Positions 38 through 22,090 of a stretch of 22,090 nt of DNA are shown here, in pieces. The translations under genes were made by a program, and so were the position numbers. Below the pieces are notes generated by a model. That model had not been told where the DNA came from, ran no database searches, and saw only the letters and a list, made by a program, of their open reading frames with translations. Every line of letters starts with the position of its first letter. Position 1 is the first letter of the stretch. Source of the DNA: Cyanophora paradoxa CCMP329 (lineage: Eukaryota; Plantae; Glaucophyta); the NCBI GenBank assembly GCA_004431415.1, contig QPMI01000385.1, positions 1-22,090 on the forward strand. The letters are read 5' to 3'.

Positions 38-2507
38 TCAATCACTGCTTGACGCAAGCTGACGGCAATTTTGAAAGCTGAGAAAACGCCGAGTGATGGT
101 CGCCCAGCACGCTTCTTGTGAACCATCAGGAAACTCAAGCTGCCATTCAATCTGCGAACTCTTGAGTGTGTGCCACCTGCTCAACAAGGCAGGATGAACA
201 AACCTGTGCTTGAAGAAGGGAGCCTACCATTGGCCCAGGACGGATGTTTAGCCTGCGGCAGATCTGCTCACCCTGCCGGGCAAGCGAGTGGTCAAAAAAG
301 TCAAAACACCTAAGCTTAAAGAAAAAGGTACTTACATCGTAGTGCGGCTTCAAATCCCAGACTCCAACAAGACCAAGAATCACGACGAAGGCACGGAATC
401 TCTCGTACAGCTCCTTTAGGCGGGAGATGGCGAGCTGTTCATCAGAGTCTCCATCTGCCACGAGCTCAGCGTTGACATAGATACATTATGCGATCATATC
501 GTCACACCATGCATGTGGTCCGAAACGTGAACCATATCGTGCGCGAGGGCGAGATCGAGTGCATCTTGCCATGAAGCGCCAACTTTGCGAAGCACCAGTC
601 CTAGCATCGACGTGAGCATATTGATGGCATTCAATTGTTTAGAAAAAGAATCGAGCACCTAATTCCACACGAGAGAGCGCTGCCCCCGACTCGAGCCTGT
701 GGACAAGCTTGCGAAGTGATGCCGCTGACTCCATCAAGTGAGCCACTTCTTGAGTCTCTGATGCAGATCGCTGGCACAAATGCACTTCAGTGACAGAGCA
801 TTACAAGAACAGACAAGGACAGACCCGAAGGGAGTTCTGCACGAGGTAATTAGTTACTGGTATGCACTTCCTCTTCTCCTTGAAAAAGAACTCCTTCATC
901 GGGTACATGAAGGATGCCAGGAGCAATGTGCTGTGTGCAGTGTACACTGGCTTTGGGCGATGCCGGATGAGCCTGGTCGTGCACTTAGCAAACAGGCGCA
1001 AAATTTGACACGAGGGGCGCACGAAAACATCATAGCTGCATGATGCACACAAGCTGCTTCAAGTGGTCTGCGTGCATCGTGGCCTGCGCCGAGGGTCGAT
1101 GGGCGCAGAAAAGAAAAAAGGAAGAGCTGCGCACTCTCTGGGAGGCCATGGCTACAGGTCGGAAAAGCGAAAACAACGGGGAAAAGATCGAGATCGCAAA
1201 TGCTGGCCAGAGCCCGGACAGGGTGTGGGCCTGTTTTCGAAAACATCAATGAATATACGCAGTGACGCAAAAACCATCTCACCGGCAAGCATGCCCGAAA
1301 CTTCAATCCCAATGCGCTCTCGGCTAACCTTCTGCTCAAGTGCAGACTGATTGCCACTGTCAGCAGAGGAACCATTGAGCAATAATCGGGGAACGTGCGC
1401 ACGTGCACTTCGGGATCCCGAGCAGCCGAGACAAGCTCCGGGTCGAGCGAGAAACGGAGCCGGCTTGCGAATCGGATGGCGCGCAGAACACGCAGGGGGT
1501 CGTCTAGGAATGTCACACGCGGAGCTAGTGGAGTACGGACGATGCCCGACGAGAGGTCTCGAAGACCCTGCGAGATCGCGTCTAAGGGAAGAAAAGTTCG
1601 ATTCGAGTCGCGTGGCAGCTGCCAGACCTGCCCCGTGAGATCCTCAATCGCGCCCTTATTGATATTGTAGAAGAGGGCATTGATGGTCAGATCTCGTCTA
1701 AATGCGTCTTCCTTCGCTGTTCCGAGTGTCTGCGCCGACCGGGAGGTAGTCAGCCGAGCTCGCGCTGGCGCCGGCGCCGGAGGGTGCACCATGGCTGGAA
1801 TACGGGAGTTGCAGCTGTATTCCTCGCAACGGAGGTTTACGAAATCAATGTGCAAGCCGAAGATGGGCAAATGAGCGGTCTCCAGATGCTTCGACTGCTC
1901 CGGGTTCGAGTGGATGACGCCGATCGAGTGTGTCATCTCGCCCTTCTGGCGCAGGTAGAGATTCACCATTTCGGCGAATTCGACCCCAAGCATGTCATCC
2001 AGGGCAATATCGATGTCGGGGCTGCTCATTCCGAGCAGCTGCGGAGAATCAGATCTTTGACGTTGATTGCAGGAGATGCCCTCTGCGCACCTTGTCCCGG
2101 ACCCAGCCTCCAGCGACCCGCATCTGCGTCTTAAGGTCGTAGTGGCGCGCCACTTCCAGCAGAAGCTCGAACACATCCCGCTCCTTGGGGGTGAGCTCAA
2201 TTGTCGAAGCATCAGGGCGCCGAGGCGGGGTGAGCTTCTCCAGCGCTGCATACACTATTTCTGGTCTTGCCTGCGTCGCGCTGGCGCTCCCCGCGTGACA
2301 GCAAGGGGGCGCTGCGGCCCAGCGAGAGGGCTCAGGCTGTGCGACCCACAACCGCTGCCTCCGCACGCCGCGGGTCGCCGGTCGGCTGTTCAAGAGGGGC
2401 TTTGAATGCCTCAAGGGCATCAGGGACGCTTCCCGACCGCTGGCCGCCGACAGGGTGCGTCCGGCCGCGCAGACGTCCGGGGGGCAGCAGGTGGCGAAGA
2501 GCGCCAT
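38..2507 (-). CDS. CCA1: CCA tRNA nucleotidyltransferase (class II, fungal/plant type), ~12 short GT-AG introns, N-terminal extension
   Basis: Spliced translation gives VAGGWVRDK|LLGMSSPDIDIALD, NPEQSKHLETA, IDFVNLRCEEY, EDAFRRDLTINALFYN, TFLDDPLRVLRAIRFASR, KVSRERIGIE, VWDLKPHYD|GEQI and IEWQLEFP. Introns include 2039-2090, 1730-1789, 1568-1627, 1347-1402 and 601-658. Stop TGA at 38-40. The 5' exon structure is less certain. Confidence 0.95.
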
Positions 2508-3970: not shown

Positions 3971-4157
3971 CACCACTTCTCGTCCCCGCCCCGCCACAGT
4001 GACAGTTGCTCTGCTCTTTCGCTCTTGTTTTTCTCTCCTCCCAATGCCCTGCCCCCGTTCCCGGCCGCGTCCTCCTTGTCGATTCTCCTCTTTCGCCTTC
4101 TCTCCCCTCGTTGCTGTTCGCACATCCTCAACTTGTGTGCTTTCTCTCCATGTGAGG

Positions 4158-7100
4158 CTAGCTTAACGGCCGCCGCGCACGCAGTGCGCCTTGCAGGCGA
4201 GGCAGTAGGGGCGGGGCCGGGACATTGGTGGCGGGTTGGGGTGCGATCTCGAGGAGGGTCCGGGTGAGCGCCTCGAGTGGGGGCGATGGTCCGGCCTCGA
4301 GGGCCGCGAGCAGTTCCTCTTCGACGGCGAGCGGACTCGCCGCGCCTGCCCCGCAGGCAGCCCACAGCAGGTGCGCGAGGGCGGCGGCCCCGTGCGGCCC
4401 CGCGCCCGGCGCGAGCTGAAGGACGCGCCGCACGAAAGGGGCCCCTGCTGAGGAGGCGAGCCCGCTGGCGGAGGCGGCGGCGGCGAGGGCGGCGGTGGCG
4501 TCCCCGGGGCCCTCCCCCGTGAGAGCAAGCGCCACGCCGGCCTCCGCGATTGCCCCGCCCGCCGCCGCCGCCGCCCCAGCGTCCAGAGGAGCGGCCCCCT
4601 GCGCCGCCCGGCCGGCGGCCTCCAGAGCCGACCGCATCCGCGGGAGCCAGCCGCGCGCCCCCGGCGAGTGAACGGCAGGCTGCTGGGAGGCCTCACCCGC
4701 CGCCGGCAGCTCCCCAGGCGGACGCAGGCCGGAGCCCTGAGCAGGACGTGAGGCAGGCACGGGAGGGGCGGGTGGGGCAGGCAGGCCTGGGCGGGGGGCG
4801 CCTTCGGTCGCGAGGCGCCGGCGAGGGCGAGCACGAGGCGGAGGGCGCCTGCGAGCTCCCCCGGCGCGCTCCGCCCCCGGCACAGCGTTCCCGACGGCGC
4901 CGCGGGCCCCACCACCGGCTGCGGCCGGACTCCACCGCTGCCACCACGGGCGGCTCCAACTCCGCCCCGGTGGCGCCTGGGTCGCCGCCTTGCGGAGCTG
5001 GCCCTGGCGTAAGGCGGGGCGCGGCGCGCGGGGTGCGCAGGCGTGCCTTGGCGATGCGGTCGGTGAGGGCGGCGCGGACGGCGGCGCGGGCCGCGTCGGC
5101 GGCGGGGCGGCGGGTGGCGGCGGCGGCGTGCTCCTGCGCGAGGGCCACCGCCGCCTCCACCGCCGCCCGTTGCTCCCCTGCGCCCCGTCCTCGGCCCGCG
5201 CGGCGCGCCCGTGGCGGACGCCGCACCGAAGGGGCGAGGGCGGAGACGGACGCGCGGATGGCGACGCGGGCGCGCTCGCGGGCCGAGCGCTCGGCAGCCG
5301 CCGCGGCCTCCGCCTCAGCACGGGCGACTGCGGCGGCTGCGGCCTCCTCAAAGGAGGGCGGGAGGTCGCCCCCGGCGGGCAGCTCGCCGCGAGCTGCCGC
5401 AGCGCCTCGAGGGGCCCCGCGAGGCGCGGCCCGCACGCCTCCGCCGCCGCCCACGCCACGGCGCTCGGCACCGCCGCGTCTGCGGGGCGCTCGGGGGGCG
5501 GCGGGGCGGGCGGCGGGTGGGGCGGGCACCGAGGACGAACTGGAGGAGGCGGTGGAGAGCCGGCCGCTGCGCGAGGAACGCCTCCTGCAGCAGCGCCCGC
5601 CCGGGGCGGCCCCACTGCGCCCTGTCTCGCGCCCCGCCCGAGCCAGATGACGTCGGGCCGGCGCACCCCGAGGTCCTCCCCGGGGGTCGGTTGCACGGGC
5701 CGAATCTTGCGCTGCGGGCCGCCCGACCCCGCCGGCAGCCCCGCTCCTCGGCCGGGGGAGTCGAGGGAGAGGCCAAGGCCGGGGACGGCGCGGCGGCGGC
5801 GGGCGAGGGCGGCGGCGGCGGAGCGAAGGCGGTGGAGGGGCGGGCAGCAGTGCCGCGCGAAGCGGGGACTCACGAGAGCCGCCCTCGCGTCCACCGAGTC
5901 CGGAGGCGGTGGGCCAGGGGCGAGCGGCTCCTCGGGCGGGGGTGCGTTAGCGGGGGCGAGGGCGAGGCGGGCGGCCCAGGCGTCGACGAGGGCTCCGCAC
6001 GCGACGCTGGCCGGCCCAAAGGCGCTTTCCGCGGGGTCCGCCAGCCGCCCCAGCCGCCGCGCCGCTAGCACGGCCCGGCCCCCGCCCGCACAACCGCCGC
6101 GTCCCTGCGCCGCGCTCGATGCCGGAGCGGGTCCGGGCGGGCGGACGGACCGGGCGGCGGGGGCGGCGAGGAGCGGGGCGAGGAGCTCGGTGGCCCAAGG
6201 GATGGTGAGGAGGAGCGAGCCACGCGCCGCCGCCCGCTGCACCGCCCCGCACACGTCCACCGGCAGCGCCCGCGGCCTGCGCCCCGCTCGCCGAGGGCGC
6301 GGGGCGGACGGGCGGGGCGGGGGCGGGGGCGGGGGACCCGTCGTGCGGGGCGAGGGGGCGCGGGGCGTGGAAGTAGGGGCGGCGAGGACGGCCCCGAGGG
6401 CGGCCGCCAGCACGCGCAGGAGGAGCGCCCGGTCGGGGAAGTCCCGCTGCCCCTCCCTGAAAGGGGGCGTCACCTCCGGCGCGAGGCGGCGCGAGATGGG
6501 GGCGCGCACGGGGGCGCGGGGGCGGCGGGGCCGGGGCGAGCGGCGGGGTCGAGCTCCTCGAGGGCGGCCGCGAGGGCCGCCACCGCGTGCACCGTCAGCC
6601 GGTGGCTGTCGCACGCCTGCCGCCCCCTCAGGCCCCGCGTGCACAGCGGCGGCGCGCGCGGCGGGCCTGCAGGAACGCGAAGAAGGCGCGCGGGGCGGCC
6701 GCCGCGCCGGCTCCCTGCGCCAGCGCCTCCCCGGCCGCCTCCCACGCCCCGAGCTCCCCAGCGCCCGCCCCGCCGGGCCCGCCTCCCCGCCGGCGCACGC
6801 GCCTCCGGAGGCAACGCGGCGGGGAGCCCGCGGCCGCGGCCGGCGGGAGGGCGCGGAGCGCGAGGGAGGGAGACGGGCGGGGCGGCTGGGGCGGGGCCGG
6901 GGAGGGCCGGGGGCGGCGAGGCGGTCGGCGAGGGCTCCGATGCGGCCGGCGTCGGCGAGGCGGGCGAGCTGCGGGTCGCGCTCGTCTGCGCGGCGTCAGC
7001 GGGCGGCGGGCGGCAGGGCGGGCGGCGGGCCCGCCTGGACAGGAGAGGGCGACGAGTCGGGCGACGAGCTCGCGGGCGAGCCACGGGACGTTCACCTCCA

Positions 7101-8674
7101 GCGCCCCCGCCAGCACCCCGCGCGCCTGCGCGCCGCTCGCCCGTCCAGCCCCGCCGCCCCGCGCCCCGCGCACCCGCCCCGCGAACGAGGTCGCGTCCGC
7201 GGCCGCCCCGGGGCAGCCGCGGGGCCGGCGTGCGCGGCGAGCAGCGGCCCCGACTCGCTCATGAGCTGCGGCGGGATGAGAGGCGGGAGGGCGGGGCGGG
7301 GGCGGGGCCGGCCTGGAAGACCGCGTCCCGCAGCCGCTCCCGGTTCGTCGCCTCCCGCGCCGCCCCCGGCCCCTGCCCGCCCCGCCCCGCCTCCCGTCCC
7401 GCACCTGCCGCCCGTCAGAGCGGCAGCGAGGCGGGCGGGGCCGGCGTGCCGGGACCGGGCTCGAGGGCGGGAAGGCTGTACAGGCCGAGCGAGCGAGGGG
7501 CGCGGTGGGGAGGGCCCCGGGGGCTCCTCGGGGCGGGGGCGGCGCGGAGGAGGGCGGCGAGGCGCGGGGCGAGGGCGGCGAGGAGCGGGTCCTGTGCGAC
7601 GAGGGCGGGCACGCCGGCCCCCGCGTGCCGCAGCACCGCCCCCGCCCCTCCAGCGCCCGCGCCGCGAAGTACGGCCCGTCCCCGGCCCCTCGCAGCAGCC
7701 GCCCCCGCACCGGCGGCGTCCGCGCGGGGCGCGCCGCGAGGAGCCGCAGCAGCAGCTCCAACTGCGCGACCGCCTCGCCGCCGCCGCCTCGCTGCGCCTC
7801 CAGCAGGCCCGCCGCCGCCTCCGCCGCCGCCACGTCCAGCGCCGCGCGGTCGCTCAGCTGCCCCAGCAGCGCCTCTGCGTCGGCCGCCGCGAGAGCCTCC
7901 TCCGCCGACGCCGGCGCCGAGGGCGAGGGCGAGGGCGGCGCGTGCGCCTCGCGCGTCAACGGAGCGGCGCGGGGGGGCGTGGCGAGCGGCGGGGCGTCCT
8001 CAAAGAGTTTGCGGGGCGCGACGGCCTTGACCCAGGGCGACTGCGACGGCGGGCCGGCCGCGCTCGCGGGGGCCGCGCTGTCCGGCGTGGCGAGCGACCG
8101 CGCACTCTGCAGCGAGGGCCCACGGCCAACGCGCAGGTCGCCCTCGTCGCTCGCTCGACGATCAAGCGCTGGCTCAGCCGCTGCTCGGCTGGCGGGCGGC
8201 GGTTCAGGCGCCTCCGGGGCAAAGCGCTCGTCCTGCGGTGCGGCGCCGTTCGGCAGCTGCGTGGGTCGGATGCGCTTGCTCTGCAGCGATGTCATCGACG
8301 AATGTGCCGCTTTTCACGCGCAATCGAACCTGCTTCGCGCCTGCAGGTGCCGCCGACGGCTTGGCGGCGCTCCGGAGCGACGGGAACTCCTCTCGAGGTG
8401 CGGCGCATGCTGGCACTGCTTCTGCTGCAGCCCCTGGCGCCAACCCACCTGCGCGCTCCTTAAGACGGGTCGCGCATTCGAAATCGCAGACCGCGCACGC
8501 GGAGAGCTCGCAACAAGATTCGCCTCGGCCTCAACGAGCTGCAGCAGGCTCTCGGCCTCCTCTCGCCACGATGCCGCCAGCTTTGAATTTGATCTGACTA
8601 ATACCTGGAGACGGCCGAGATTCCAGCTCTACGCTGACTACTCAATCGCAGCTTAGCGCGCTGCAGAGCGGCAT
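4158..8674 (-). CDS. CDAN1: Codanin-1 (CDAN1/discs lost) homolog, multi-exon, with apparent 1-nt frameshifts; start codon and 3' end approximate
   Basis: Collinear motifs matching my recollection of Codanin-1: EEFPSL..KRIRPT, AQLELLLRLL, PYFAARALE, NRERLRDAVFQ, GRIGALADRL, FFAFLQACDSHRL, LRVLAAALGAVL, LLLTIPWATELL, RKIRPV, LQEAFLAQRPALHRLLQFVL. Confidence 0.8.
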
Positions 8675-8784: not shown

Positions 8785-9600
8785 ATGAGCGACGGCGAAA
8801 AGGGCGAGAAGCCAGGTGCGCTGCGCTGCGCACGCGCTGCAGAGCGCCGGCGAGCGTCTGAGCGCGCGGCGAGCAGTGGGCAACGGCGGCCGCGTCGAGG
8901 GCAAATACGAGTGGACGCAGTCGCTGCAGGAAGTGTGGGTCAGCTTCAGACTTCCCTCGGCGGTCACTTCCAAGCAGTGCGACGTCAAGATAAGCAAAGA
9001 GCACCTGCGGGTCGGCCTCAAGGGCCAGCCGCCCATCGTCGACGTGCACCTCCGCATGCGACTGCTGCGGCAACCGCTCATGCTCGCGTAGGGCCCCCTG
9101 CACAAGACGGTGAAGATTGAGGAGAGCTTCTGGCAGCTCGGTACGCGCAGAACCTTCATCGACGGTGCAAGCGAATTCCGACGCTTCCGCGCAGAGGAGG
9201 GGAAGATTATCACAGTCATTCTGCAGAAGATTAACACTATGGAGTGGTGGAAGTGCGTCCTCCAGGGCGACCCAGAGATCGACACGACGAAGGTGGAGCC
9301 CGAGAACTCGAAGCTTTCCGATTTGGACGGCGAGACGCGCGCGATGGTCGAAAAGATGATGGTCCGTCTCCACAATCTCAGGCTGCATGGCCACCTCGCT
9401 TATAGCAAATGTGCGCTTGCAGTTCGATCAAAGGCAGAAGGCGGCAGGACTCCCGACCAGTGAGGAGATGCAAAAGCAGGAAATGCTCAAGAAGTTCATG
9501 GCTGCAGTGCGTTGTCTGCTCCTCGACCTTTCGGCAACGGAACTGATTTCACTTCAATTAGCATCCAGAGATGGACTTCTCAAATGCAAAGGTCATGTGA
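8785..9600 (+). CDS. NUDC: NudC-family co-chaperone (CS/p23 domain + NudC C-terminus), 178 aa; exons 8785-8815, 8877-9043, 9092-9140, 9195-9361, 9423-9506, 9562-9600
   Basis: [54 protein letters not shown]|[21 protein letters not shown]|[10 protein letters not shown]. Five GT-AG introns; exon sum 537 nt is in frame. Confidence 0.96.
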
Positions 9601-9971
9601 GTTGTAGCTATTCCCCTACTGTAGTATCTATGACAGAGCATTGACTTTGAGCTTTGAGCATTTGGACACGAATTCAAACCGCAAGTCCCGCCGGTTCGGG
9701 CTACAAGTGTGGGAATGTACACTGCGGCCGCCGCAGCCGCGGGCCCAGCCCACCAGCAAGCTGGCCAGCTGGGCCCTGCATGGCCCCCTAAGGAGAGTGA
9801 TGCGCCTCCCTACGGACACTCTAGCTAGCTGTAGCTACATGTGCCCGCACGGCGAGTGTGGCATCGCGTCTTGTGGCGGCAGGGGTCATCTCAGGGCGGT
9901 GGCGGGAGCTCCTACGGGCCCTGGGAGCCCGACATGGAGTCAGCCTGCCCCGGGGGCAAAAAGGGGTCGAC

Positions 9972-10599: not shown

Positions 10600-12673
10600 C
10601 TAGGAGTGGTCGGCAGAGCGAAGCCAGGAAAGCCAGTCTGTGAGGAAGGGGACCAGGGAGTCGCGGGGCAAGGAGGCCTTGTAGTCCCCCTCGCCCACGT
10701 ACGTGAGTAGGCTCACGGGAGGCGCGGCCTGGCTGTGCGCTGCAAGCTCCGACGGCCTCTCGATCAAGTAGCCTGTGAAGCTCGTCGTGCCCCGCTGGAA
10801 GCCAGGGCGTATGGGGTGTGGAAAGACGCTTTGGGGCAGGGACCGTGCCACACAGAGGTAGGCCCCGCTCTCGGGGTCCACTCTGCACTGGCAAATCTGC
10901 GGGCGGAAGAACGCTCAGCAAGTAGAACGCAACGCATTGTGCTCTCATGCGGCCCACCTCGACGTAGTCGCAGTTCCCCACAAGCGGGGCGCGGTAGGCG
11001 GAGTACAGGACCTCACCATCCCCCCCGGAGTTCAAGACCCGGAACTCCAAGCACGGCTTCTCCCAGCCTTGCCTCAACTGCAAGACGCTGATCATGAGCT
11101 GATCGAACGATCGCGGTACCGAATATGCAAGAACAGAGCGCACAGAAGGATCTGTCAGCAAGTGGAAGAGCCGCTCGACATCCAGCTTCAGCAGGGCAAT
11201 CAGTTTGACTGCTCCATCACTCTTAACCCAGATAGTTTCCTCCTGTCCCTTGTGTAACACTCTCCAACTGGGATCTTGACTCGTGTCTTCAAGCAAACGC
11301 TCGAAATCGTTCGTATATATGTCCGGCACTGCTGTGGCAGCTTCTGCATTGGTTCCTTGAACGCGTTGGTTTGAAGAGCCTGCACGTGATGGATCTTCTC
11401 CAGGTGCTGCTGATTTACCAAAAGGGTGAAGAACTGTTGCGAATGCGGCAAGAGGGCCAGAAGAGCTTCCGATGTCTCCTGCAGCAAGGTGCATCTGCGT
11501 CACGAGGTTTCAGACAGAGAAGTCCACTGGATAATCGATCCTGCACGCACCCGAGAGCGTGCAAATCGCACGGCTGACGGGAGCACAGAGGACTGGAGGA
11601 ACTGTCCCATGGATGCGAGTAACTGTAAGCCTGTGTCAACTTTCTTCTGAGCCCCGGGGGGGGGGGGGGGGGGGGGGAACAAAGGAGAGAGGGGAGGGGA
11701 GGGGAGGGGAGGGGTGGAGTGGGGGGAGGGGGTGGTGCGCGCGCAGGAGCGCACAGCATTTGACTGGTACATCATCTTGGAAGTCTTGCTATCGGAGGGA
11801 GTGTGAAGCTCCGTTGCTGGCATTGCTCGGGGAGAGGCTGGAGTCAGGTGTACTATGCCACCAACCCCTCGAGCTGCATCAGTGCTCGGGTTCGGCACAG
11901 TCTCTGTCATGAACTCACTGTGCTGCAGGTGTCAGCCACTAGCAGGATTTGAATACCCACTGGAGGGCACACTGAGACGCAATGAGGGAGGCGCTTTCGA
12001 GGGAACCGCAGCTCAAGGTCTCCAATCCCTGCGTGGCGCCCGGCCACGTCATCAGGTGGCTTGCTACAAAGGTGTCAAAAAGGGTGCACCTGGCGAGCTC
12101 GGAGCATGATAAGTCCCGCGTATAGCTGGCAGATGAGCAGCAGGAGCGATCCGAAGATAAGCAGGTCGTCAGTGAGGCCCTGTGCCCGCCGCTCGGACCA
12201 CACTTTTGCGTCGCAGGCGATGGGACACGTACCAGGAAGTAACCGCTCATGAAGCGCAGCTTCAGGACGACGTAGAGGATGCTGCCGCCTGTACCGACCT
12301 GGGGGGGGATGAGAACGTCCAAGGCGGGGGGCGGGGTGGGCGTTCGATCAGCGGACTGTGCGAGGTCGACCGGTCCAGTACGTACACAACCGTGAGCACG
12401 CTGTCTCGGAAGAGCGACAGGACGACCAGGTCGAACAAGGTCCTATCGGGGCTCTTGATCGAAAAGCCATAAAGGATGAGGGCTAGGATAGGGCTCGCGA
12501 AGGTGACGTAGGCGAAAGCCAGCGTTGGCTTCATCATGAAGCGTATGAGCAGAGGACCGAACGGCAAGGAAGGGGCGTGCGCTCACGGGGAGGAGCCCCT
12601 CTAGGTCAACGAAGCGCGCCCCGCCCGTCGCCCGCAGAACGGCGCTGAGGGTCAGGTTTCTTCGCGCGGCCAT
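10600..12673 (-). CDS. Membrane protein with N-terminal hydrophobic (MENTAL-like) segments and C-terminal START lipid-binding domain (STARD3-like architecture); middle exons uncertain
   Basis: Exon 1 12673-12587, intron 12529-12586. Hydrophobic segments LAFAYVTFASPILALILYGF, TLFDLVVLSLFRDSVLTVVY, GSILYVVLKL and LLIFGSLLLLIC. START-like SWRVL..LFHLLTDPS|LRQGWEK..VLYSAYRAPLVGNCDYVE..YLCVARS..PGFQRG..TGYLIE..LTYVGEGD. Stop at 10600. Confidence 0.75.
11656..11732. repeat. Poly-G and (GGGGA)n tract inside an intron of the START gene
   Basis: Run of ~22 G at 11656-11677 followed by GGGGA repeats. Confidence 0.9.
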
Positions 12674-13223
12674 GATAGAGTCCTGTAAAAAATCATCAGC
12701 GGCTCACAGCGCGCGTACAGAAGCACAGAAGGCTGACGTGGAAATCCATGGAAGCGCTCAAGCGCTGTCAGGTGGCTGCGGCGCCTGTCCCGCGCGGCCC
12801 GACGGCCGCCGCAAACCGCACCGCCACCCGAGCCTCTTTTCAAGCTCCTGATCCCCTCGCGCCTCTCTCTCAAGAAGTGCGTGCGGTTGTCGGGCGAACA
12901 CCGGTCGTACGCAACGTCCGTGCTGCCCGTGCCGCTCCTCGAACTCCGCAAGATTTTGCTCCGGCTGCGCGACGCTCGATCACAGAGCTTCGCGACGACC
13001 TCGGGTGCCCTGGCTGTGCGCCGAAAATTCGACTCCCGGTTCGACTCTCGCGGAGGGCACTTGCTCCCCGCTTTCTCCGCGCGAGCCGGCCTGCAGCTGG
13101 CCGCTTTCCCCGCGTTCTCCCGTGGACGTCTCGTATTCTTTCACTTCGATCCTCTCGGGTGCAGTGCGAAAATCCAGACCTTGATAGCCGCCAGCGGGGG
13201 CGCACCCCGCGCGGTCAGAGGAA

Positions 13224-15465
13224 ATGGGAGATGATCGCGGAGGGCAGAAGGTTCTTTATATGCGCTCGGGCGCCGTGCTTAAGCTTGTCTGATCCAGTCG
13301 CAGCGGGGCGGTTCGCTTTTCTCCCGGCTCCTGGGCTCCTTCTCGAACTCCAGCAGGAGTCAGTCTGCAGCCTCAGCATCTTCGGGGGGTATTGTGAGCT
13401 TGGGCTCATCAAGCGTCGTGGCAGCTCGTCAGCCTACGAGCTCCTCTTCCCGCAGACCCGCGGGGCCCGCAGCAGCGGGCCCCTCCTCCGAGGCGCCCGC
13501 GTCTCAGCCTTCCGTGCATGCATCAGCATCACGCGCGGCCCGGCACTCAGAGGCGCCGCGCTCCTCGTCGGCTGCCCCTTCTCCGTCCGCCACGCGCTCC
13601 TCGAGCGTGAGCCGCCCCGCGCCGGGGGCGGCCTCGCCATCGCACACCCGCAGCGCTGCTGCGCCGTCCCCGCAACCGCGGTCGCGGTCAGCAGCAGCAC
13701 AACCGGCGGCGGCTGGGCGCCAGGAGGGGTCGGGGGCAGCACCGGTCTCGGAGCTTCGGCGGCGGCTGCAGGAGGCGGGCCTGGACCCGCAGATGCTCGC
13801 AGCTCTGGCGCTCGTCGAGCAGCCCGACTTCGATCCACGACGACTCACCCGCGACGTGCCCGCCCGCCGGCACCGCCCCGCCCTGCCTGCGCGCGCGCGC
13901 ATGACGGGCAGGGGACGCAGCAACTGCGCCAGCTTCAGGCGCTTCTCCAGTTCGGGGCGGGGGCGGGCCGGGCCCAGGCGACGGCGGGGGCGTCGCGGAC
14001 AGTGACCCTCACGGCGGCGCAGTCACTACGGGCCGTGCCCCGGCGGAGCGCCCCAACGCGCGACCCCGAGCAGGCGGCCGCCGAAGAGGCGGCGCGGCAA
14101 AAGGCAAGGGGGGGGGGCTACGCGCGGGGCTGCCAGGGCGTGGGGTGACGGGGCGGGCGGCAGGAGCTGGAGCGGGCGCGGCGGAAGCTCTCGCTGCTGC
14201 CGGTGTACCGCTTCGGGGCGGCGAACGTGTCGACCTCGGGGGAGGGCAACGAGTGCCCCATCTGCATGCTCGCCTACGAGGAGGGCGACCAGGCCCGCCC
14301 CGCCCCGCCCCGCCCCGCCCCGCTCCGCCCCGCCTGAGGCGGCGCAGGTGCGGACGCTGCCCTGCTTCCACCGCTTCCACGCGGATTGCGTGGGTGTGCC
14401 TCCCTTCCCGCCCCCCCACCCCCACCCCCCCCCCCCCCACCCCCCACCTCCTCCCCCCCGCCCCGCCGTCCCCCGCCCGCCCCCGCGTCCCCCGCGTCCC
14501 CCGCGTCCCCTGCCCACGCGCCCCTCCCAGGCACTTGGCTCGTCGGCGGCTCCGCCGTCAAGAAGACCTGCCCGTGCGCCCGCCCGCCCGCCGGCCCCGG
14601 TCCACCGCTGCCTTTGCTGACCGGCCGCGTGCAGGTGTGCAAGTTCGACCCCTTCGTGCGCCGCCCCGCCCGGCCCGCGCCGCGCCGCCGACTCCGGGCA
14701 GGTGGAGGTCGTCGTGCTCCCCGCCGCCCGCCCTGCCTCCTCCTCCCGCCGCCCCGCCACAACCACCTCCCGCACCCGCCCCGCCATCTCTTCCCGCCGG
14801 CCCCACCGACCCGCCCCGCCCGGGCCCGCCCCGGCGGCCGAGGGCGAGGCCCGGCCCCGGCCCCGGCGGCGAGCGGCAGCGAAGCAGCGGCGGCGGCGGC
14901 GACGGCGCGTGGGCCGGGGCCGGGCCGGGCCGGGCCGCGGGGCCGGGGCGGGGACGACGGCGGGGACCTCATGGGCGCCCTCTTCGGCTTCTTCTCCGAC
15001 GAGGCCGCCCCCGCCCGCCCCGCCGCCCCGCGCCCCGCGCCCCGGCCCTCTTCCCCGTCCCCACCCCTCCCTCCTCCCCGCCCCGCCCCGCCCGCGGCAT
15101 CGGCGGCCTCGCCCGCCGGCGGCCCCTCCGCCCCGCGGGCGCCCGTGGCCCTTCCCCTTCCCGGGCCCAGTACGGCGGCGCCGCGCGCGGTGGCAGGGCC
15201 GGCACCCGGCGAGCGGGCCGCGGGGCGGGGGAGGCGGGGCGGGGCGGCGGGGCTCGGAGGCGACGAACCCTTTCTCAGACGACTTCGACGAGGAGGCGGC
15301 CTCGCGCAGCGCACCCCCGCCCGCCCGCCCCGCACGACCCCTTTCGCCCCGACGCCCCCTGATCCCTCCGCCCCACCCCCGCACCGCATTCAGCAGCGCC
15401 AGTCCTGTTCGCACTGTCGCCTACGATCCGCCCCCGCAACGCGCTGCAGGGCGCCGCCGGCCTGA
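13224..15465 (+). CDS. RING-H2 zinc-finger protein (probable E3 ligase) with low-complexity flanks; 3' end approximate
   Basis: ATG 13224 and intron 13251-13303 join MGDDRGGQK to the 13394 ORF frame. Spliced RING: CPICMLAYEEGDQ|VRTLPCFHRFHADCV|GTWL..KKTCP|VCKFDP (needs +1 C at 14571-14573). Confidence 0.85.
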
Positions 15466-18359
15466 GCCCGCACGACGCCGGCGCGCGGGAGGGTGGGCGC
15501 GGGAGGCCCCGGGCGCTGCGGGGCGGGGCCGGGGGCTGGGATCTCCCTCCATGGCGCTCCACTCGATGTCGGGGCCCAGCCCTCCGACCCCGCTCCCGCT
15601 CCGGCCGCGGCCGGCTGCAGCTCGCGGGCTTCCCCGGCGCGGCGCCGCGCGGGGTCGGCGGCCCGGGCTCGCCGGCCCCCGCGGGCGCGGGCGGCGGCGG
15701 CGAGGAGGCGCGCGGCGGCTGTGCAGGAGGGGCGCAATGAGAGGGGGAGGGCGGGTTGACGGGGCGCGGGTGGGCGGGAGGGGGCACCGGGGCGGGGAGG
15801 TGGCGGGCGAGCTCGGCGAGGGCCGCCTCGTCGATGTCGGTCTCGGGGCGGCCTCGAAGGCGGGGGCGAGCACGCGCGCGTTGAAGCGCGCCAGCCACGG
15901 CTGCGACCGCGCGTACGCCTCCCCAGCAGCCTGCCCGCCGCCATCAGCCCCCGCCGCCCCGCGCGCCCCGGCGGGGGCGGGGCCGGCCTGGCGGGGGTCT
16001 GGATGAGGCGGTCGGCGGCGGCGGAGGCGGCGGCGGCGCCGGCGGAGAGGGGGGCGGGGAGGCGGAAGGGGAGCGGGGGGTCGGAGATGCGGGAGACGAT
16101 GATGGCGCCCCAGTCGCCCTCCATGGCCTTCATGACGGGCAGCGTGGCGCCCCCGAGGGCGAAGATCGTGAAGAGGATGATGGCGAGCGTCGCCGTCTGG
16201 ATCTCCCCGCGCGCCTCCGACCGCAGGTTCAGCGAGAGCGCGTACGCGATGGCGCCCCGCAGCCCCGAGAAGAACATGCTGCCCCGCGTCAGGCCGGCCT
16301 TCGGGGCGGGGCTCCCGGGCCCGCGGGGCGCGGGGCGCGGCACATGAACTGGTCCTTGGGCTCGATCTTCTCGGCCCGGTAGCGGTTCAGCAGCCACGCG
16401 CACGGGAAGACGTTCGCCGCCCGCGAGGCCACGCATAGCAGGATGCCCCAGAGGATGCTGGGGGAGGGGCATGAGGCGGGGCGTGCGGGCGGGGTGGGCG
16501 CCCCCGCACAGGGAGGAGGGCGCGAGGCGCATGGTGGCGAGGGTGAGGCCTGCGGGGCGGGGGCGGGGGCGGGTGAGGGGCGGCGGGGGCGGCGGGGGGC
16601 CGGGGCGGGCCGAGGTAGGCGAAGACGAAGGTCTCGGAGAGGAAGGCGGCGACGCGGAAGGTCGACGAGGCCGCCACCCCTGCCGCCCCCTCGCGCGCCG
16701 CCCCCGGGGCCCGCGGGGCGGGGCGGACGGGAGGAGAGGGAGAGGTTCGGGTGCGCGTAGTGCGCCATCGTCGCCCCCGCCGAGAGGATGCCCAGGATCC
16801 CGCTGCGCCCCGTCAGCCGCCCCGGCGGGGGCCGAGCCCCGCCCCGAGCCCCACGCGCCTCATCCCCACCCCCTCGCAGAAGGCGAACGGCCTGCGCGCG
16901 TCTCTGCTCAGCCGACGGCGCGAAATGGGGCGTGGCCGGCAGAGGCGGTGGGCGCGCCAGTAGCTGGGCGGGGGTCAGGGGGGCGGGGGCGGGGGCGGGG
17001 CGGGCGGGGGGCGGACGCAAAGAGGACGAGGACGGCGAGCTCTGCGGGGCGGTGAGCGGGGCCGGCGGGCGAGGGCGGCGGGGGCGGGGCGCACCGAGGG
17101 AGGGGTAGCGGCGGAGGGAGGAGTGCTTGAAGAGGGCGGAGGCGGCGAGGGCGGTGGCGACCCCCACGGCGGTCGAGCCGAGGAACGACCACAGGAACTC
17201 CCCCAGCGGCCGCAGCGGCGAGACCCCTGCGCCTCGCTCGCCTCGCGGGGCGGGGCGGGACAGGGCGGGGCGGGGCGGGGCGGGGCGGGGCGGGCCCTCG
17301 GGGCGGGTGGCGAGGTCGCCGAACAGGTGAAAGAGGGCGATCGCTGCGCCGCCTCAGCGCGGCGGAGGCGGGGCGGGGCGGGGCGGGGCGGGCGGGCGGG
17401 CCGACGGCGTCGTTAAGGACGGCCTCGCCAAGGACCAGCGTGTAGAGCACCTCGTTCACCTGCCCCGGGGTTAGCCCAGCGGCCGCCGGCGCGGGGCGGG
17501 GCGGGGCGGGGGCGCCTTAAGATGCTGGAAGATGGCGAGGGTGGCGACGGGGTCGACGGCGGCGAGGAGCGCCCCGAAGGCCATCGCGTCGAGGAAGCGC
17601 AGCCGGAAGCTCACGCGCGCCAGCCCCAGCAGCCACAGCGGGATCCCTGCGCCCCGTCACCCCCGCCCCGGCCCCCGGCGCGGGGCGGGGCGGGGCGGGC
17701 CGAAGGAGAAGCAGGTGAGGCAGGTGCCCGGGATGGCGAACATGAGGATGGAGCCGGCCTGCCGCACGAACCGCCCCTGCCCGCCCCGCGTCAGCCCGCG
17801 CGCGCCGGGGCGGCCGGGGCCGGGGCGGCGCCTTAGAAAGGGAGAATCCTGCATGCAGAATGATGAAGGGTATGCAGAGCAGGAAGAAGGTCTGCGCCGC
17901 CTCAGCGCACAAGCGACGCGGGCCCCGCGGCGGCGGGGAGCGGCGGGGGGCGCCTACATCCGGGTTGGGGAGGACGGCCGAGACGGAGGCCTCCGCATCA
18001 TGGCCGGCGAGGCGCGCCGTAATCCCCGCCTGCGACCGCGCCCGTCGGCGGCCGGCGCGCCGGGGCCGGGGCGAGGCCGGCGCACGGCGAAGCCGAAGAG
18101 GATGGAGCCGATGGAGTCGGGGAGGGAGCGGAGGCGGGAGCGGAGCATCGCGTAGACGAGCAGCACGCAGCAGAGGAGCACGAAGGTCGCGATCGCCAGG
18201 CCCAGGCCCTGCCCCGCCTGAGGCGCCGCCGGCCGCCGCGGTCGCGCAGGGGCACCAGCCGCGCACCTTCACGCTGTCGTCACCAAGGGCCTCCGACTCC
18301 CCCGCGCCCGCTGGCGGCCCCGCATCGGCCCCGCCGCCCGTTTCCAGCTCCGAGCTCAT
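15421..18359 (-). CDS. Na+/H+ exchanger, CPA1 family (NHE8/intracellular NHX-like), ~18 introns; C-terminal tail and stop approximate
   Basis: Spliced: LPDSIGSILFG, TFFLLCIPFIILHAGFSLSK|GRFVRQAGSILMFAIPGT, FGALLAAVDPVATLAIF, LYTLVLGEAVLNDAVAIAL, FAYWPFAFCEGVGMSGILGIL, FLSETFVFAYLG, RAANVFP, FSGLRGAIAYAL, TATLAIILFTIFALGGATLP. Confidence 0.93.
16958..16963 (-). other. 6-nt microexon (CTACTG) of the Na+/H+ exchanger
   Basis: Flanked by introns 16964-17016 (GT..CTGAC..CAG) and 16892-16957 (GC..CTGAG..CAG); restores F-A-Y-W-P, matching the family FAY(L)P pattern. Confidence 0.8.
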
Positions 18360-18751
18360 GCGCCTTCGCTCCGCTGCACGTTCGCGTTCACAGGGAGAAG
18401 TGGCGCTCCGGCGCGTGGGCGGCCGCGGTCACTGCCCGCCAGTCTCCGCCAACGGCACTGCGCGCGCGGGAATGTCGTTGCAAGTCTACGCGCCGCTGCG
18501 CCGCTGCACGCACGGGGGGCAGCTGTGCGGCCTACGGTCAAGCGGCTTGGGTCTCGGCTTCAAAGACGCGACTCTCCGTGCGACGTACGTATTGTACACG
18601 TGGCGTACAACGCCTGCTGTGCCTGGCCCGCGTACGTATACGGGCGCCTCTCGAAGTTTCACCCGAGCGAACTGCAGTATTCGCATACCCCCTCCGAAGT
18701 GGGGCGGCACTGCAGCTAGCGCTGGATCAATTTTGCAATCTAATTGCAGCA

Positions 18752-19224: not shown

Positions 19225-20990
19225 CTACGGGAGGAGTGTGGGCGTATTTGGAGAGCTGGCGGGCGATCTGGCGTGGGCTGCCGCTGAAAGGATGATGTCG
19301 GCTGCCTTGGCTGCTCCGTCACCCTCCTCACGCATCTTCTGTGCTGCTGCCTCGACCCGCTCGCGGATGGGGCCCCCGTCTTCGCCCAGCAGGTCGAGGA
19401 TGGCGCGCTTGAGGCCTGCACCCTTCGAGCCGAGACTGGAGAGGCCACACGGGCTCCGCCCGAGGCCAGCCCGCAACACGCAGCCCGCCCAGAAGGGCTG
19501 GTCGTTTGCTGAAAAGTCTGCGGGGAGAACGATGAGGGGGCGCGCTGCCCGCACGGCCGCGTGAACTGTGCCCGCTCCGCCGTGTGTCACGATGAGAGCG
19601 CAGCGAGGGAAGAGCCAAGAGTGCGGCGCAGGCTCCTGGAGCAGGAAGAGCCGCTCCGAGTTGGCCCGCAGGGCTCCGAGAACGGCTTCTCCATACAGAA
19701 CAGCGGAGCCGGTAACGGTCGCGAGGTGCAGGATGGATCTGTACATGTTTCGCTGTCAAAAACAAGAGCAACTTGAGGGGGGTCGGCCTAGCGACGTACC
19801 GAACGCCTCGCTCTGCGAGGGCCGCGAGGGCAGTCGCGACAGTCCCCAGCACGGTCTTCGACTGCTCCATTGTGAACGTGCCAAGCATCGAGCCGAAGCC
19901 ACAGTAGACAGGTGGCTCCCCAGCAGAAAGGAAGTCGGCGAGGGCCGGCGGGGGCGTGAACGGTGCCTCGGGGACGAGCGCTGATCCGACGACGTGCTCG
20001 TTGGGCGGCCAGTCGGCGGGCCGCTGCACTAAAACAGAGCTGAAGAGGTGCACTGTTGGAAGGGCCCTCGCGCGATACAGCTGAGCGGGGCTTTCGGTCA
20101 TCGGCTTGAGGCCTACCCCCGCCCGCAGCTCGTCAATTAGGGGGCGGTTGAGGAGCCATCCAGCCGCGTGGAACATGCGCCATTTCGCCAAGGCGGCGAA
20201 GCCAAACCAGACACGGGCGTCGCCAAAGCCGACGGGAGGGGCGAACTCGCGAGTCTCGCAGAGGGGTGAAAGGTGCGCCGCGCAGAAGGGCACCTGCGGC
20301 GCGCTTTGAGAGATGGCGCAGTCTCGCAGTCAGGCGCTGGGCGCACGTCCCCGATGGCAGAGCAGATGGAAGGTCCAAACCAGACGGGCTAGCGCGTGGT
20401 GAGCGGGAGGGCGCGGGCTGCGAAGGGCGGTGAGGGGGGATATTCTCACGAAGCTCGAGAGCACGACCAAGTCCGGCTTGAAGGCCCTCGCGGCGGCGAG
20501 CGCCCCCGAAAACCACTCTTTCATCAGGCGCCGCATGAACACCTTGCTTGCGGCCATCGCGCTCAGCCCCTTGGCGCGCTGCGCGAGCTTTTATTTAGCA
20601 CGGCGGTCCGGTCTGTGCTGTGCGGAAGAAACGGGTGCGTACGTGCCAGGCGATTCCCTCTGGCCATTCGTACAAAGCGACCTCCCCGCTTGTGCCGATG
20701 TCGGCGAAGCGCACGCCTTGCTGTTGAAAAACCGCGTTACTGAACACGCTGTGGGTCGCCTGTGTGGGATCAGTGCATATCAGCGATGCACTCAGGCACG
20801 TATGCAATGTTAAGCAACACGCACGAACATAACGTCGCATCCCTTCGCCGCGAATGCCCTGCCGAGGCCGCAGAAGGGCAGCACATCCCCTCTACCGCGG
20901 TGGCGTCAAGTGCGGCCGCGGCCGGCAGTGGACGCGTGGATTATAATCTTATTCGCACCGCGTGCCGCAGGAGAGGATGAGGATCTTCAT
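19225..20990 (-). CDS. UDP-glycosyltransferase, sterol 3-beta-glucosyltransferase-like (GT1; GT28_N + C-terminal UDPGT), 6 GT-AG introns
   Basis: MKILILSCGTR|GDVLPF..ATH, RPADWP..HVVG, LADFLSAGEPPVYCGFGSM, APHSWLFPRCALIVTHGGAGTVHAAVRAARPLIVLP..DQPFWA. Confidence 0.92.
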
Positions 20991-21265: not shown

Positions 21266-21485
21266 AAGGGGGGGTACCCCCTCCCTTGCTCCCTGGTGAA
21301 TTGGTACCGCGGTGCGGCGTACTTTCTGTGTTAGCAATTTTCGGCCTTGGGAAAGGAGAGGCCCTTGCAATTGGGTCTGTGCCTGTCCTCTGGCAAACTT
21401 CAATAGTATACCCCGTCAAACTGTCCATCAAGTGTACCCGGCCCCGCGGCCGATCGCGCGAACGATATATATCATCGATCGGTCC

Positions 21486-21536
21486 GATCATCGGTCCGAT
21501 GATATCGATCGCGATCGATATCATGATCCGATGATC
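21486..21536. repeat. Long palindrome (26-bp perfect core, 9-bp outer arms)
   Basis: ATGATATCGATCGCGATCGATATCAT (21499-21524) is self-complementary; outer arms GATCATCGG (21486-21494) and CCGATGATC (21528-21536). Confidence 0.9.
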
Positions 21537-21586
21537 AAGAATCAGTAACGAAGTGCCCCGGGCCCGAGCTGGGCTTGCACAGGCCT

Positions 21587-22090
21587 TCAAGGCTTGGAGC
21601 TCGGAGGGCTCGCCTGCGATGCTATATAGCTAGGCGATCGTGAAGGATGCCATGATGCAGTGGGGGGAGGGGGGGGGGGGGGGGGGGGGGGGGAGGGTGT
21701 GTGTGTGGGGGGGGGGTGAGGGTGTGTGTGGGGGGGAGGGGGGGGGGGGGGGGGGCAATCAGCGGGCGGGCCCTGGCCGGGTCGCGGTCCGGGGCGAGGG
21801 CCTCCTTCATGCGCTCGCGGAGGTCGGCCTTGAGGTCCGCGAAGGAGCGGAAGAGGAACTCCGTCGCCGACCCGCTCCGCGCCAGGCCCCGCCCGGACCC
21901 CTTCCCGCTGCCCCCGGCCCCACCCGACCCGGGCCCCGCCCCGGGCCCCTCCTCCCCCCGCTCCGGCGTCCCCACCGCCCCCGTTGACCCAGCCCGCTGC
22001 ACCTCCAGCCCTTCGCCAGCCCCCGGAGGCGAGGCGTCCGGAGGTGGTGAGGCGGGGCCGGGGGCGGGGCCAGGCACGGGGGGCTCGGGG
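21587..22090 (-). CDS. 3' end of an unidentified gene running off the window
   Basis: Coding-like frame ..LARSGSATEFLFRSFADLKADLRERMKEALAPDRDPAR, then a C-rich intron-like tract and a possible last exon ASPPSSKP* ending at 21587. Confidence 0.5.
   Translation of the reverse strand, partial: PRAPRAWPRPRPRLTTSGRLASGGWRRAGGAAGWVNGGGGDAGAGGGGARGGARVGWGRGQREGVRAGPGAERVGDGVPLPLLRGPQGRPPRAHEGGPRPGPRPGQGPPADCPPPPPPPPHTHPHPPPTHTPSPPPPPPPPPPTASWHPSRSPSYIASQASPPSSKP

What the first reader, a model, noticed from the sequence alone, without database searches (positions are those of the whole stretch)
15931..17831. Half of the Na+/H+ exchanger introns are GC-AG, and GC donors are confined to hyper-GC domains
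Seen: restoring conserved CPA1 motifs requires GC donors for minus-strand introns 17777-17831, 17647-17700, 17460-17515, 17344-17401, 17227-17295, 16892-16957, 16803-16858, 16550-16610 and 15931-15987 (9 of ~18). More occur in the RING gene (14104-14163, 14293-14347) and Codanin-1 (7266-7312, 6986-7034, 6617-6666). Several contain no GT at all. All 25 introns I mapped in the moderate-GC CCA1, LOG2-like, NudC and UGT genes are GT-AG. Known: GC-AG is ~1% of introns in most eukaryotes and usually has a near-perfect GCAAGT context; high GC-donor use is reported in some haptophytes and dinoflagellates. Here the donors are GCCCGC, GCGCCG, GCGCCC, GCCGGC, GCGGGC, GCGCGC, GCGCGT and GCAAGG, mostly with very poor pairing to canonical U1. 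Inference: local GC pressure converts GT to GC and the spliceosome tolerates it, possibly through variant U1/U6 or relaxed +2 recognition.
Basis: partly seen in the sequence, partly recalled or inferred. Interest (0 to 1): 0.85.

Follow-up and report, generated by a model that had tools for sequence, protein, structure and literature searches.

The report
GC-start introns follow local GC
In the alga Cyanophora paradoxa, half the introns of a Na+/H+ exchanger gene lying in ~80% GC DNA begin with GC instead of GT, while 26 introns in neighbouring ~60% GC genes all begin with GT; frequent GC-start introns are already known from GC-rich algae, but this contrast between neighbouring genes points to local base composition as the cause.

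Summary
The window is Cyanophora paradoxa contig tig00001668 (EukProt genes g9547-g9554).

**Exchanger gene.** An eighth (16892-16957, beside a 6-nt micro-exon) is required by five homologues, one clustering with a glaucophyte transcript. The ninth (15931-15987) could not be verified and leaves the wrong frame. That gives 8 GC-AG among 16 well-supported introns.

**Other listed introns.** One RING-gene intron (14293-14347) is validated by RING-profile continuity. The three Codanin introns are unverified.

**Local-GC contrast.** All 26 introns I could map in the moderate-GC genes are GT-AG (START 11 from the public model; NudC 5, CCA1 4, UGT 6 curated by hand). Fisher p = 1e-4. Every GC donor follows an exonic G. 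GT and GC donors share one consensus, G-Y-S-C-G-C, in both compartments.

**Reading.** These look like ordinary U2-type introns whose +2 T has drifted to C under regional GC pressure. Intron interiors have C:T of 13.5 against 1.6.

**Limits.** U1 and U6 are not in the window.

**Novelty.** GC-AG abundance in GC-rich algae is published, and this scan has already noted it elsewhere in this genome. Only the local-GC dependence is new.

The parts
15393..18359 (-). CPA1 (NHE8-like) Na+/H+ exchanger gene, public model tig00001668_g9553.t1. Local GC is 0.75-0.81 and GC3 is 95%.
17777..17831 (-). GC-AG intron, AAG|GCGCCG, 55 nt, contains no GT
   Evidence: In the public model. The junction FSLSK|GRFVRQ is gapless against the transcript-derived orthologue. 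No GT alternative.
17647..17700 (-). GC-AG intron, TCG|GCCCGC, 54 nt, with an in-frame TGA
17460..17515 (-). GC-AG intron, AAG|GCGCCC, 56 nt, contains no GT
17344..17401 (-). GC-AG intron, TCG|GCCCGC, 58 nt. It splits the NDAV|AIAL motif.
17227..17295 (-). GC-AG intron, AGG|GCCCGC, 69 nt
16958..16963 (-). 6-nt micro-exon CTACTG. It supplies Tyr-Trp and completes the preceding Ala codon.
   Evidence: All five homologues have two residues here, and P0002/P0130 have YW.
16892..16957 (-). GC-AG intron, CTG|GCGCGC, 66 nt, in frame and stop-free. The public model reads through it.
   Evidence: The 22-aa insert is absent from all homologues. Also recovered by my frame-aware dynamic-programming exon-chain finder.
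16803..16858 (-). GC-AG intron, GAG|GCGCGT, 56 nt
   Evidence: The only GT alternative would delete 10 conserved residues.
16550..16610 (-). GC-AG intron, TCG|GCCCGC, 61 nt, contains no GT
15931..15987 (-). Candidate GC-AG intron, CAG|GCCGGC, 57 nt. Unverified.
   Evidence: Signals are good, but the frame after splicing does not match the homologous tail frames.
18209..18266 (-). GT-AG intron, AAG|GTGCGC
18030..18085 (-). GT-AG intron, GCC|GTGCGC
17892..17957 (-). GT-AG intron, GAT|GTAGGC
17042..17094 (-). GT-AG intron, TCG|GTGCGC
16964..17016 (-). GT-AG intron, TGC|GTCCGC
16680..16728 (-). GT-AG intron, CCC|GTCCGC
16458..16509 (-). GT-AG intron, CCT|GTGCGG
16279..16343 (-). GT-AG intron, CAT|GTGCCG
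14293..14347 (+). GC-AG intron in the RING-H2 gene (g9552), CAG|GCCCGC, 55 nt, contains no GT
   Evidence: RING profile continuity (positions 13|14) and a frame change across the intron
14104..14163 (+). Probable GC-AG intron in the RING gene, AAG|GCAAGG, 60 nt, with an in-frame TGA
   Evidence: The upstream exon was not independently verified.
10603..12749 (-). Control: START-domain gene g9551 at local GC 0.55-0.63, with 11 introns, all GT-AG
   Evidence: Public model P0128 mapped with unique canonical junctions
8785..9603 (+). Control: NudC gene, 5 GT-AG introns (8816-8876, 9044-9091, 9141-9194, 9362-9422, 9507-9561)
   Evidence: Hand-curated from the sequence and frames. The exon-chain finder recovered four of them.
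19228..20990 (-). Control: UGT (GT1/GT28-type) gene, 6 GT-AG introns, open frame from the ATG
864..2251 (-). Control: CCA-adding enzyme gene, 4 GT-AG introns (2090-2039, 1789-1730, 1627-1568, 1022-973)
4161..8295 (-). Codanin-1-like gene g9549 at 81-86% GC.

Best explanation
These are ordinary major-spliceosome (U2-type) introns of Cyanophora paradoxa. Its genome-wide donor consensus is (A)G|G-Y-S-C-G-C.

Some gene bodies carry a strong regional push towards G+C. It may be mutational bias or GC-biased gene conversion; which of the two is not known. There, the weakly selected T at donor position +2 has been replaced by C in about half of the introns. The replacement is seen only where the last exon base is G, which keeps at least three potential base pairs with U1. 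In neighbouring genes of moderate GC the same pressure is roughly eight times weaker, and T is retained.

Shown here:
- the exon-intron structure;
- the donor sequences;
- the association with local GC and with G at -1.

Inferred:
- that the sites are spliced as drawn in RNA;
- that composition is the cause;
- that U1 is canonical.
For: **Structure of the exchanger gene**
- Seven GC-AG introns are in the public BRAKER1/RNA-seq-guided model.
- An eighth is required by five homologues.
- The spliced product is gapless against P0130, the MMETSP-transcript member of P0002's cluster, across all these junctions.
- Five of the eight are not multiples of 3 and a sixth carries an in-frame stop, so they must be removed.
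- No frame-keeping GT-AG alternative exists for seven of the eight.

**Contrast with neighbouring genes**
- All 26 introns in four moderate-GC genes of the same window are GT-AG.
- Fisher p=1e-4.
- Allowing GC donors adds nothing to coding-chain scores in CCA1, LOG2-like, NudC and START.

**Composition and donor code**
- GC3 is 95% against 71%.
- Intron-interior C:T is 13.5 against 1.6.
- G at -1 occurs in 10/10 GC donors, 2/8 GT donors in the same gene, and 12/23 GT donors elsewhere.
- Potential U1 pairs number 3-6 for GC donors and 3-7 for GT donors.

**Literature**
- GC-AG fractions of 39.6% and 22.2% are reported in the GC-rich algae Aureococcus and Micromonas pusilla, both with a canonical U1 5' end (PMC3033335).
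- Mammals show a small excess of GC donors in GC-rich regions (PMC2490688).
Against: - No reads were laid, so no junction was seen in RNA from this locus. No same-species transcript-derived protein was found either.
- The public model of the most GC-rich gene in the window (Codanin-like, 81-86% GC) has ten GT-AG introns and no GC-AG. If that model were right, GC content alone would not predict GC donors. However, it contains Pro/Arg/Ala-rich read-through stretches and barely matches its own Pfam domain.
- A single-constraint model predicts about 2.4 GC donors among 23 moderate-GC introns, and none is seen (P=0.08). A likelihood-ratio test rejects a common constraint weakly (p=0.04 for all donors, p=0.017 for -1G donors).
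- The sample is one 22-kb window.
- My exon-chain test is not specific in hyper-GC DNA. Decoy dinucleotides CC and CG also raise the scores.
Confidence: 0.8

Rival explanations
1. Context-dependent donor recognition. In hyper-GC genes the intron start is defined largely by something other than +2, for example the C-rich island that follows the donor, or exon/intron GC contrast. T and C would then be equivalent there, while +2 T stays strictly required in moderate-GC genes. The compartments would differ in constraint as well as in mutational pressure.
For: - The contrast is sharper than one shared constraint predicts: 8/10 against 0/12 among -1G donors, with likelihood-ratio p=0.017.
- Positions +7 to +26 of hyper-GC introns are 64% C and 3% T.
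- An earlier scan note describes introns that start C-rich and end G-rich (s1-577344).
Against: - Numbers are small.
- The neutral proxy (intron interior C:T) may itself be under selection.
- The same GYSCGC consensus and similar intron lengths hold in both compartments.
- There is no functional test.
Confidence: 0.12
2. A variant snRNA reads GC donors: a changed U1 5' end or U6 ACAGA box, or a second U1 paralogue.
For: - The donor consensus GYSCGC pairs poorly with a canonical U1 at +3, +4 and +6.
- A pan-eukaryotic survey found only U11 among the minor snRNAs in C. paradoxa. That hints at divergent snRNAs in this species (PMC10639083).
Against: - No snRNA gene lies in the window.
- GT donors share the same consensus.
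- G at -1 compensates as expected for canonical U1 pairing.
- The U1 5' end is canonical in Aureococcus and M. pusilla.
Confidence: 0.05
3. Artefact. The C at +2 is an assembly or polishing error, or the true junctions are elsewhere and the gene models (the public one and mine) are wrong.
For: - The locus shows at least one likely 1-nt frame problem near 15845.
- Public models here have clear errors.
- No reads were examined.
Against: - Ten independent errors all falling at +2 are not credible.
- Five introns contain no T-bearing GT at all, and no frame-keeping GT-AG alternative exists.
- Junctions are colinear with a transcript-derived orthologue.
- Earlier follow-ups in this scan report RNA support for GC-AG at other loci of the genome. 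These are unchecked notes.
Confidence: 0.03

Closest known systems
Abundant GC-AG introns in GC-rich algae: Aureococcus anophagefferens 39.6%, Micromonas pusilla CCMP1545 22.2%, Chlorella 7.7% (Iwata & Gotoh 2011, PMC3033335)
   Same: - Very GC-rich nuclear genome.
- Tens of percent of short U2-type introns start with GC.
- The authors tie this to genomic G+C and find a canonical U1 5' end.
   Different: - That work compares whole genomes and calls the origin an enigma.
- Here the contrast is between neighbouring genes of one genome (0 of 26 against 8 of 16).
- The organism is a glaucophyte, for which I found no published statement on GC-AG frequency.
Canonical GC-AG introns of animals and plants (about 1% of introns, donor AG|GCAAGT)
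   Same: - GC...AG termini.
- Loss of the +2 pair is compensated by consensus elsewhere in the donor. Here that is an invariant G at -1 (10/10).
   Different: - The frequency is 50% in this gene.
- Compensation does not come through +3 to +6 (AAGT). Only one donor, 14104 (GCAAGG), looks classical, and the rest are GCSCGC.
Slight excess of GC donors in GC-rich regions of mammalian genomes (Churbanov et al. 2008, PMC2490688, reply to reviewer)
   Same: A within-genome dependence of GC-donor frequency on local base composition.
   Different: The mammalian effect is 0.23% against 0.17%. Here it is 50% against 0% over a few kilobases.
U12-type (minor) introns
   Same: Non-GT donors occur, and C. 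paradoxa is reported to have 77 minor introns (PMC10639083).
   Different: The donors here lack the [AG]TATCCTT box and the TCCTTAAC branch site. They share the consensus of the GT-AG majority.

Membership tests
U2-type GC-AG spliceosomal intron | The intron begins with GC and ends with AG, and its removal restores the reading frame and the conserved protein sequence. | tested here: met
   - Eight introns in the exchanger gene and one in the RING gene meet this.
- Junctions are unique among canonical solutions.
- They are gapless against the orthologue.
- RING profile positions 13|14 are continuous across the junction.
U2-type GC-AG spliceosomal intron | The lost +2 pair is compensated by a strong consensus at other donor positions. 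| tested here: met
   - G at -1 occurs in 10/10 GC donors against 2/8 GT donors in the same gene (Fisher p=0.007).
- At least 3 potential pairs to a canonical U1 remain.
- The classical +3 to +6 AAGT is not used, apart from a partial match at donor 14104.
U2-type GC-AG spliceosomal intron | A branch-site-like motif (CTRAY) lies a short distance upstream of the 3' AG. | tested here: inconclusive
   A strict CT[GA]A[CT] is present 14-18 nt upstream of the AG in 6 of the 17 listed introns. The others show variants such as GTGAC, CTGAG, CTCAC and CTCAT.
U2-type GC-AG spliceosomal intron | The junction is observed in RNA. | not testable with these tools
- No same-species transcript-derived protein was found.
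U12-type intron | Donor box [AG]TATCCTT and branch site TCCTTAAC. | tested here: not met
   None of the 17 exchanger-gene donors has this box. All fit G-Y-S-C-G-C.
CPA1 Na+/H+ exchanger (Pfam PF00999) | A significant match to the Na_H_Exchanger transmembrane profile, with the conserved TDPV and NDAVAI motifs. | tested here: met
   - P0001 matches PF00999 at E=2.1e-49.
- Exon 6 alone gives E=4e-5.
- The motifs are invariant in alignment A1.

The most novel reading that the evidence does not exclude
The compartments differ in how the donor is read as well as in mutational pressure. In hyper-GC genes with G at -1, position +2 is effectively free (8 of 10 are C). In moderate-GC genes it stays strictly T (0 of 12). 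This would point to a context-dependent 5' splice-site code, or to very strong GC-biased gene conversion overriding splice-site selection. Cyanophora would then offer a natural titration of selection at the most conserved intron position.
Probability: 0.15. Interest if true: 0.65.

Novelty: new member of a known kind. Interest (0 to 1): 0.4.

Why it matters
**Annotation.** Gene finders that forbid or penalise GC donors mis-annotate hyper-GC Cyanophora genes. Two of three public models checked here have errors:
- g9553 carries a 22-residue read-through and what looks like an out-of-frame tail.
- g9549 is padded with translated introns and has almost lost its Codanin domain.

**Evolution.** Iwata & Gotoh called the abundance of GC-AG introns in some GC-rich algae an enigma. 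Adjacent genes in one nucleus share one spliceosome and differ only in local composition. Going from 0% to 50% GC donors under those conditions is close to a controlled experiment in favour of compositional pressure acting on a weakly selected site, with G at -1 as the permissive state. A genome-wide version could measure the selection coefficient on +2 T.

Tried and rejected
- **Reads.** The RING intron that overlaps them (about 14394-14530) was left unexamined.
- **Same-species transcript-derived proteins.** I looked for proteins that would span the junctions, using exon 16 by reference and P0001:97-264. None was found; the best hit was 46% identical.
- **Exon-chain finder.** I wrote a frame-aware dynamic-programming exon-chain finder that is neutral between GT and GC donors. 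It recovers the exchanger gene and shows that GC donors add nothing in moderate-GC genes. A decoy control showed that CC or CG 'donors' raise scores almost as much in hyper-GC DNA (exchanger gene 229 and 220 against 268; RING gene 49 against 50). I therefore rejected it as evidence for the RING and Codanin introns. It also mis-called a GC donor in the UGT gene, where hand curation found two GT-AG introns around a 14-codon exon.
- **Codanin-like gene.** The public model P0129 has no PDB relative and only a sub-threshold Pfam hit. Its contig is not on record. No homologue was found for its 127-aa exon.
- **snRNA genes.** Rfam found no U1 or U6 in the window.
- **AUGUSTUS and GC-AG hints.** I could not confirm from the literature whether AUGUSTUS predicts GC-AG only when RNA-seq evidence hints at it. 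I therefore do not claim read support for each annotated GC-AG intron.
- **Joined models.** I never joined my own spliced models for a search. Exons were searched by reference, and the stored public proteins were used for whole-protein comparisons.
Full report
**What the window is**

The 96-residue exon at 15990-16277 (minus strand) is 100% identical to EukProt protein EP00741_Cyanophora_paradoxa_P009862. That protein is tig00001668_g9553.t1, 636 aa, PF00999. Two more public models from the same contig were recovered:
- g9551, a START-domain protein (P0128);
- g9549, a Codanin-like protein (P0129).

The published assembly paper describes a 67.6% GC genome with 9.2 introns per gene, mean length 86 bp. 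It was annotated with BRAKER1 from STAR-mapped RNA-seq. The paper says nothing about GC-AG introns (PMC6704402).

The window alternates between moderate GC (51-66%) and two hyper-GC stretches, 4500-8000 and 13500-18500, at 75-86%. These stretches roughly coincide with gene bodies.

**The exchanger gene**

Three-frame translation shows the classical CPA1 motifs scattered over all three frames in blocks of 10-45 residues. Exact mapping of the public model gives 15 introns, each with a single canonical solution.

This inserts 22 Arg-rich residues into a transmembrane helix. All five homologues lack the insert. P0002 is the closest homologue, and its cluster also holds the MMETSP transcript-derived P0130.

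Apart from that insert, P0001 and P0130 align without gaps across every GC-AG junction. Further points on the eight verified GC introns:
- Five have lengths that are not multiples of three.
- One more carries an in-frame TGA.
- Four of them contain no GT at all; the unverified 15987-15931 is a fifth.
- Seven have no frame-keeping GT-AG alternative within 30 nt of either end. The one alternative would delete ten conserved residues.

I therefore accept 8 GC-AG among 16 introns in the conserved part of the gene.

The ninth intron (15987-15931) has a good donor, branch site and acceptor, but it keeps frame 0. The tail of the orthologue matches the other two frames (WLARFNARVLAPAF, then ETDIDEAALAELARHLPAP). 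These two segments are themselves out of frame with each other near 15845. A 1-nt assembly indel or a different junction is likely, so this intron stays unverified.

*RING-H2 gene (plus strand).*
- The exon ending ...CPICMLAYEEGDQ has 13 residues from the first Cys.
- The next exon, VRTLPCFHRFHADCV, starts at zf-RING_2 profile position 14.
- The two exons lie in different frames, and the 55-nt intron 14293-14347 (CAG|GCCCGC) has no GT. That intron is validated.
- Intron 14104-14163 (AAG|GCAAGG) contains an in-frame TGA and has no usable GT donor. I could not show independently that the exon upstream is coding.

*Codanin-like gene.*
- The model is not trustworthy. Several 'exons' are Pro/Arg/Ala-rich stretches that look like translated introns. 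Codanin-1_C is only a sub-threshold hit (E=0.063), and there is no PDB relative.
- These three introns are neither confirmed nor refuted.

**The moderate-GC genes**

| Gene | Local GC | Introns | Basis |
|---|---|---|---|
| START (g9551) | 0.55-0.63 | 11 GT-AG | public model, each junction unique |
| NudC | 0.54-0.64 | 5 GT-AG | hand curation from frames |
| CCA-adding enzyme | 0.52-0.61 | 4 GT-AG | see below |
| UGT | 0.61-0.66 | 6 GT-AG | open frame from ATG to the end |

- For NudC, the family motifs, including the C-terminal [10 protein letters not shown], are recalled from memory of the family.
- For the CCA enzyme, one intron is validated by contiguous PolyA_pol profile positions 84|86. 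Another is an in-frame 60-nt intron between EDLTGQ and GLRDL.
- For UGT, the model includes a 14-codon exon that my automatic finder missed.

The total is 26 GT-AG and 0 GC-AG. In my frame-aware exon-chain test, allowing GC donors (or any decoy dinucleotide) changed nothing in CCA1, LOG2-like and NudC, and GC donors added nothing in START.

**Statistics**

- 8/16 against 0/26 gives Fisher p=1e-4. With public models only, 7/15 against 0/11 gives p=0.01.
- GC3 is 95% in the exchanger gene against 71% in the moderate genes.
- Intron GC is 0.90 against about 0.60, and intron-interior C:T is 13.5 against 1.6.
- If selection on +2 T were the same everywhere, the ratio of 1.0 seen at +2 in the exchanger gene implies a 0.074 penalty on C. 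That predicts about 11% GC donors in the moderate genes: 2.4 expected among the 23 moderate-GC introns used in that calculation, with P(0)=0.08.
- A likelihood-ratio test for a shared penalty gives p=0.04. Composition explains most of the contrast, and possibly not all of it.

**Donor code**

GT and GC donors, in both compartments, share G-Y-S-C-G-C, for example GTGCGC, GTCCGC, GCCCGC and GCGCGC.

The base at -1 differs by class:
- All ten accepted GC donors follow an exonic G.
- Only 2 of 8 GT donors in the same gene do (p=0.007).
- 12 of 23 GT donors in moderate genes do.
- Among -1G donors the compartment contrast is 8/10 against 0/12 (p=1.4e-4).

Counting positions that could pair with a textbook U1 5' end gives 3-6 for GC donors and 3-7 for GT donors, with the same floor of three. 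This fits a simple pairing budget: T at +2 can be lost when G at -1 supplies a pair. That is an inference, because no snRNA gene lies in the window.

**Comparison with what is known**

- Iwata & Gotoh (2011) reported 39.6% GC-AG introns in Aureococcus, 22.2% in Micromonas pusilla and 7.7% in Chlorella. They linked this to genomic G+C, found canonical U1 5' ends, and called the origin an enigma.
- Churbanov et al. (2008) found a marginal excess of GC donors in GC-rich mammalian regions.
- I found no paper stating the GC-AG frequency of Cyanophora.
- Earlier notes of this scan report 25-50% GC-AG introns with the same consensus at several other loci of this genome, one with RNA data. The basic phenomenon was therefore already found by the scan on other DNA. 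Those notes are unchecked, and I did not use them as evidence.
- What this finding adds is the local-GC dependence and the -1G rule. Both hold in this window.

**Limits**

- There is no read evidence.
- The sample is one window.
- The hyper-GC sample rests on one well-resolved gene plus two RING introns.
- The neutral proxy is crude.
- My own spliced models were never joined for a search.

**Verdict**

The compositional reading is well supported. The variant-snRNA idea is untested and not needed. This is a new example, with a useful within-genome contrast, of a phenomenon already known in GC-rich algae.

Noticed in passing
window 16958-16963 (-): A 6-nt micro-exon (CTACTG) lies between a GT-AG intron and a GC-AG intron. 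It is required to give the Tyr-Trp that all homologues have at this point of a transmembrane helix.
   Followed up: partly
window 15790-15990 (-): The exchanger's C-terminal tail matches the orthologue in two different frames that abut near 15845 (FEAAP, then ETDIDE). This suggests a 1-nt indel in the assembly or an unrecognised junction. After 15990 the public model g9553 continues in a third frame, which looks like junk.
   Followed up: partly
window 4161-8295 (-): The public model g9549 (Codanin-like, 1070 aa) contains long Pro/Arg/Ala-rich stretches that look like translated introns. Its GC2 reaches 0.88 in one 'exon', and it matches Codanin-1_C only at E=0.063. It needs re-annotation with GC donors allowed.
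   Followed up: partly
window 4000-8500 and 13500-18500: The hyper-GC stretches coincide roughly with gene bodies, and GC drops from 0.76 to 0.54 within 500 nt at the exchanger's 5' end (about 18500). The RING gene climbs from about 0.65 at its 5' end to 0.83 at its 3' end. The cause (recombination, transcription, or gene age) is unknown.
   Followed up: no
window 20347-20388 (-): A 14-codon exon (PVWFGPSICSAIGD) of the UGT gene is flanked by two GT-AG introns, one of them with a TAG acceptor. An automatic finder replaced this arrangement with a spurious 135-nt GC-AG intron.
   Followed up: yes
window 21440-21560 (-): A GATC/ATCG-rich, partly palindromic stretch (repeated gatcgat, atcggaccgatgatcggaccgatcgatg) lies about 500 nt upstream of the UGT start codon. 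A run of more than 25 C lies at 21660-21695.
   Followed up: no
   Followed up: no
all 16 exchanger introns: All 16 acceptors are CAG, usually GCAG. Intron 5' halves are 64% C, and the 3' ends are G-rich. This agrees with an earlier scan note on introns that start C-rich and end G-rich.
   Followed up: partly
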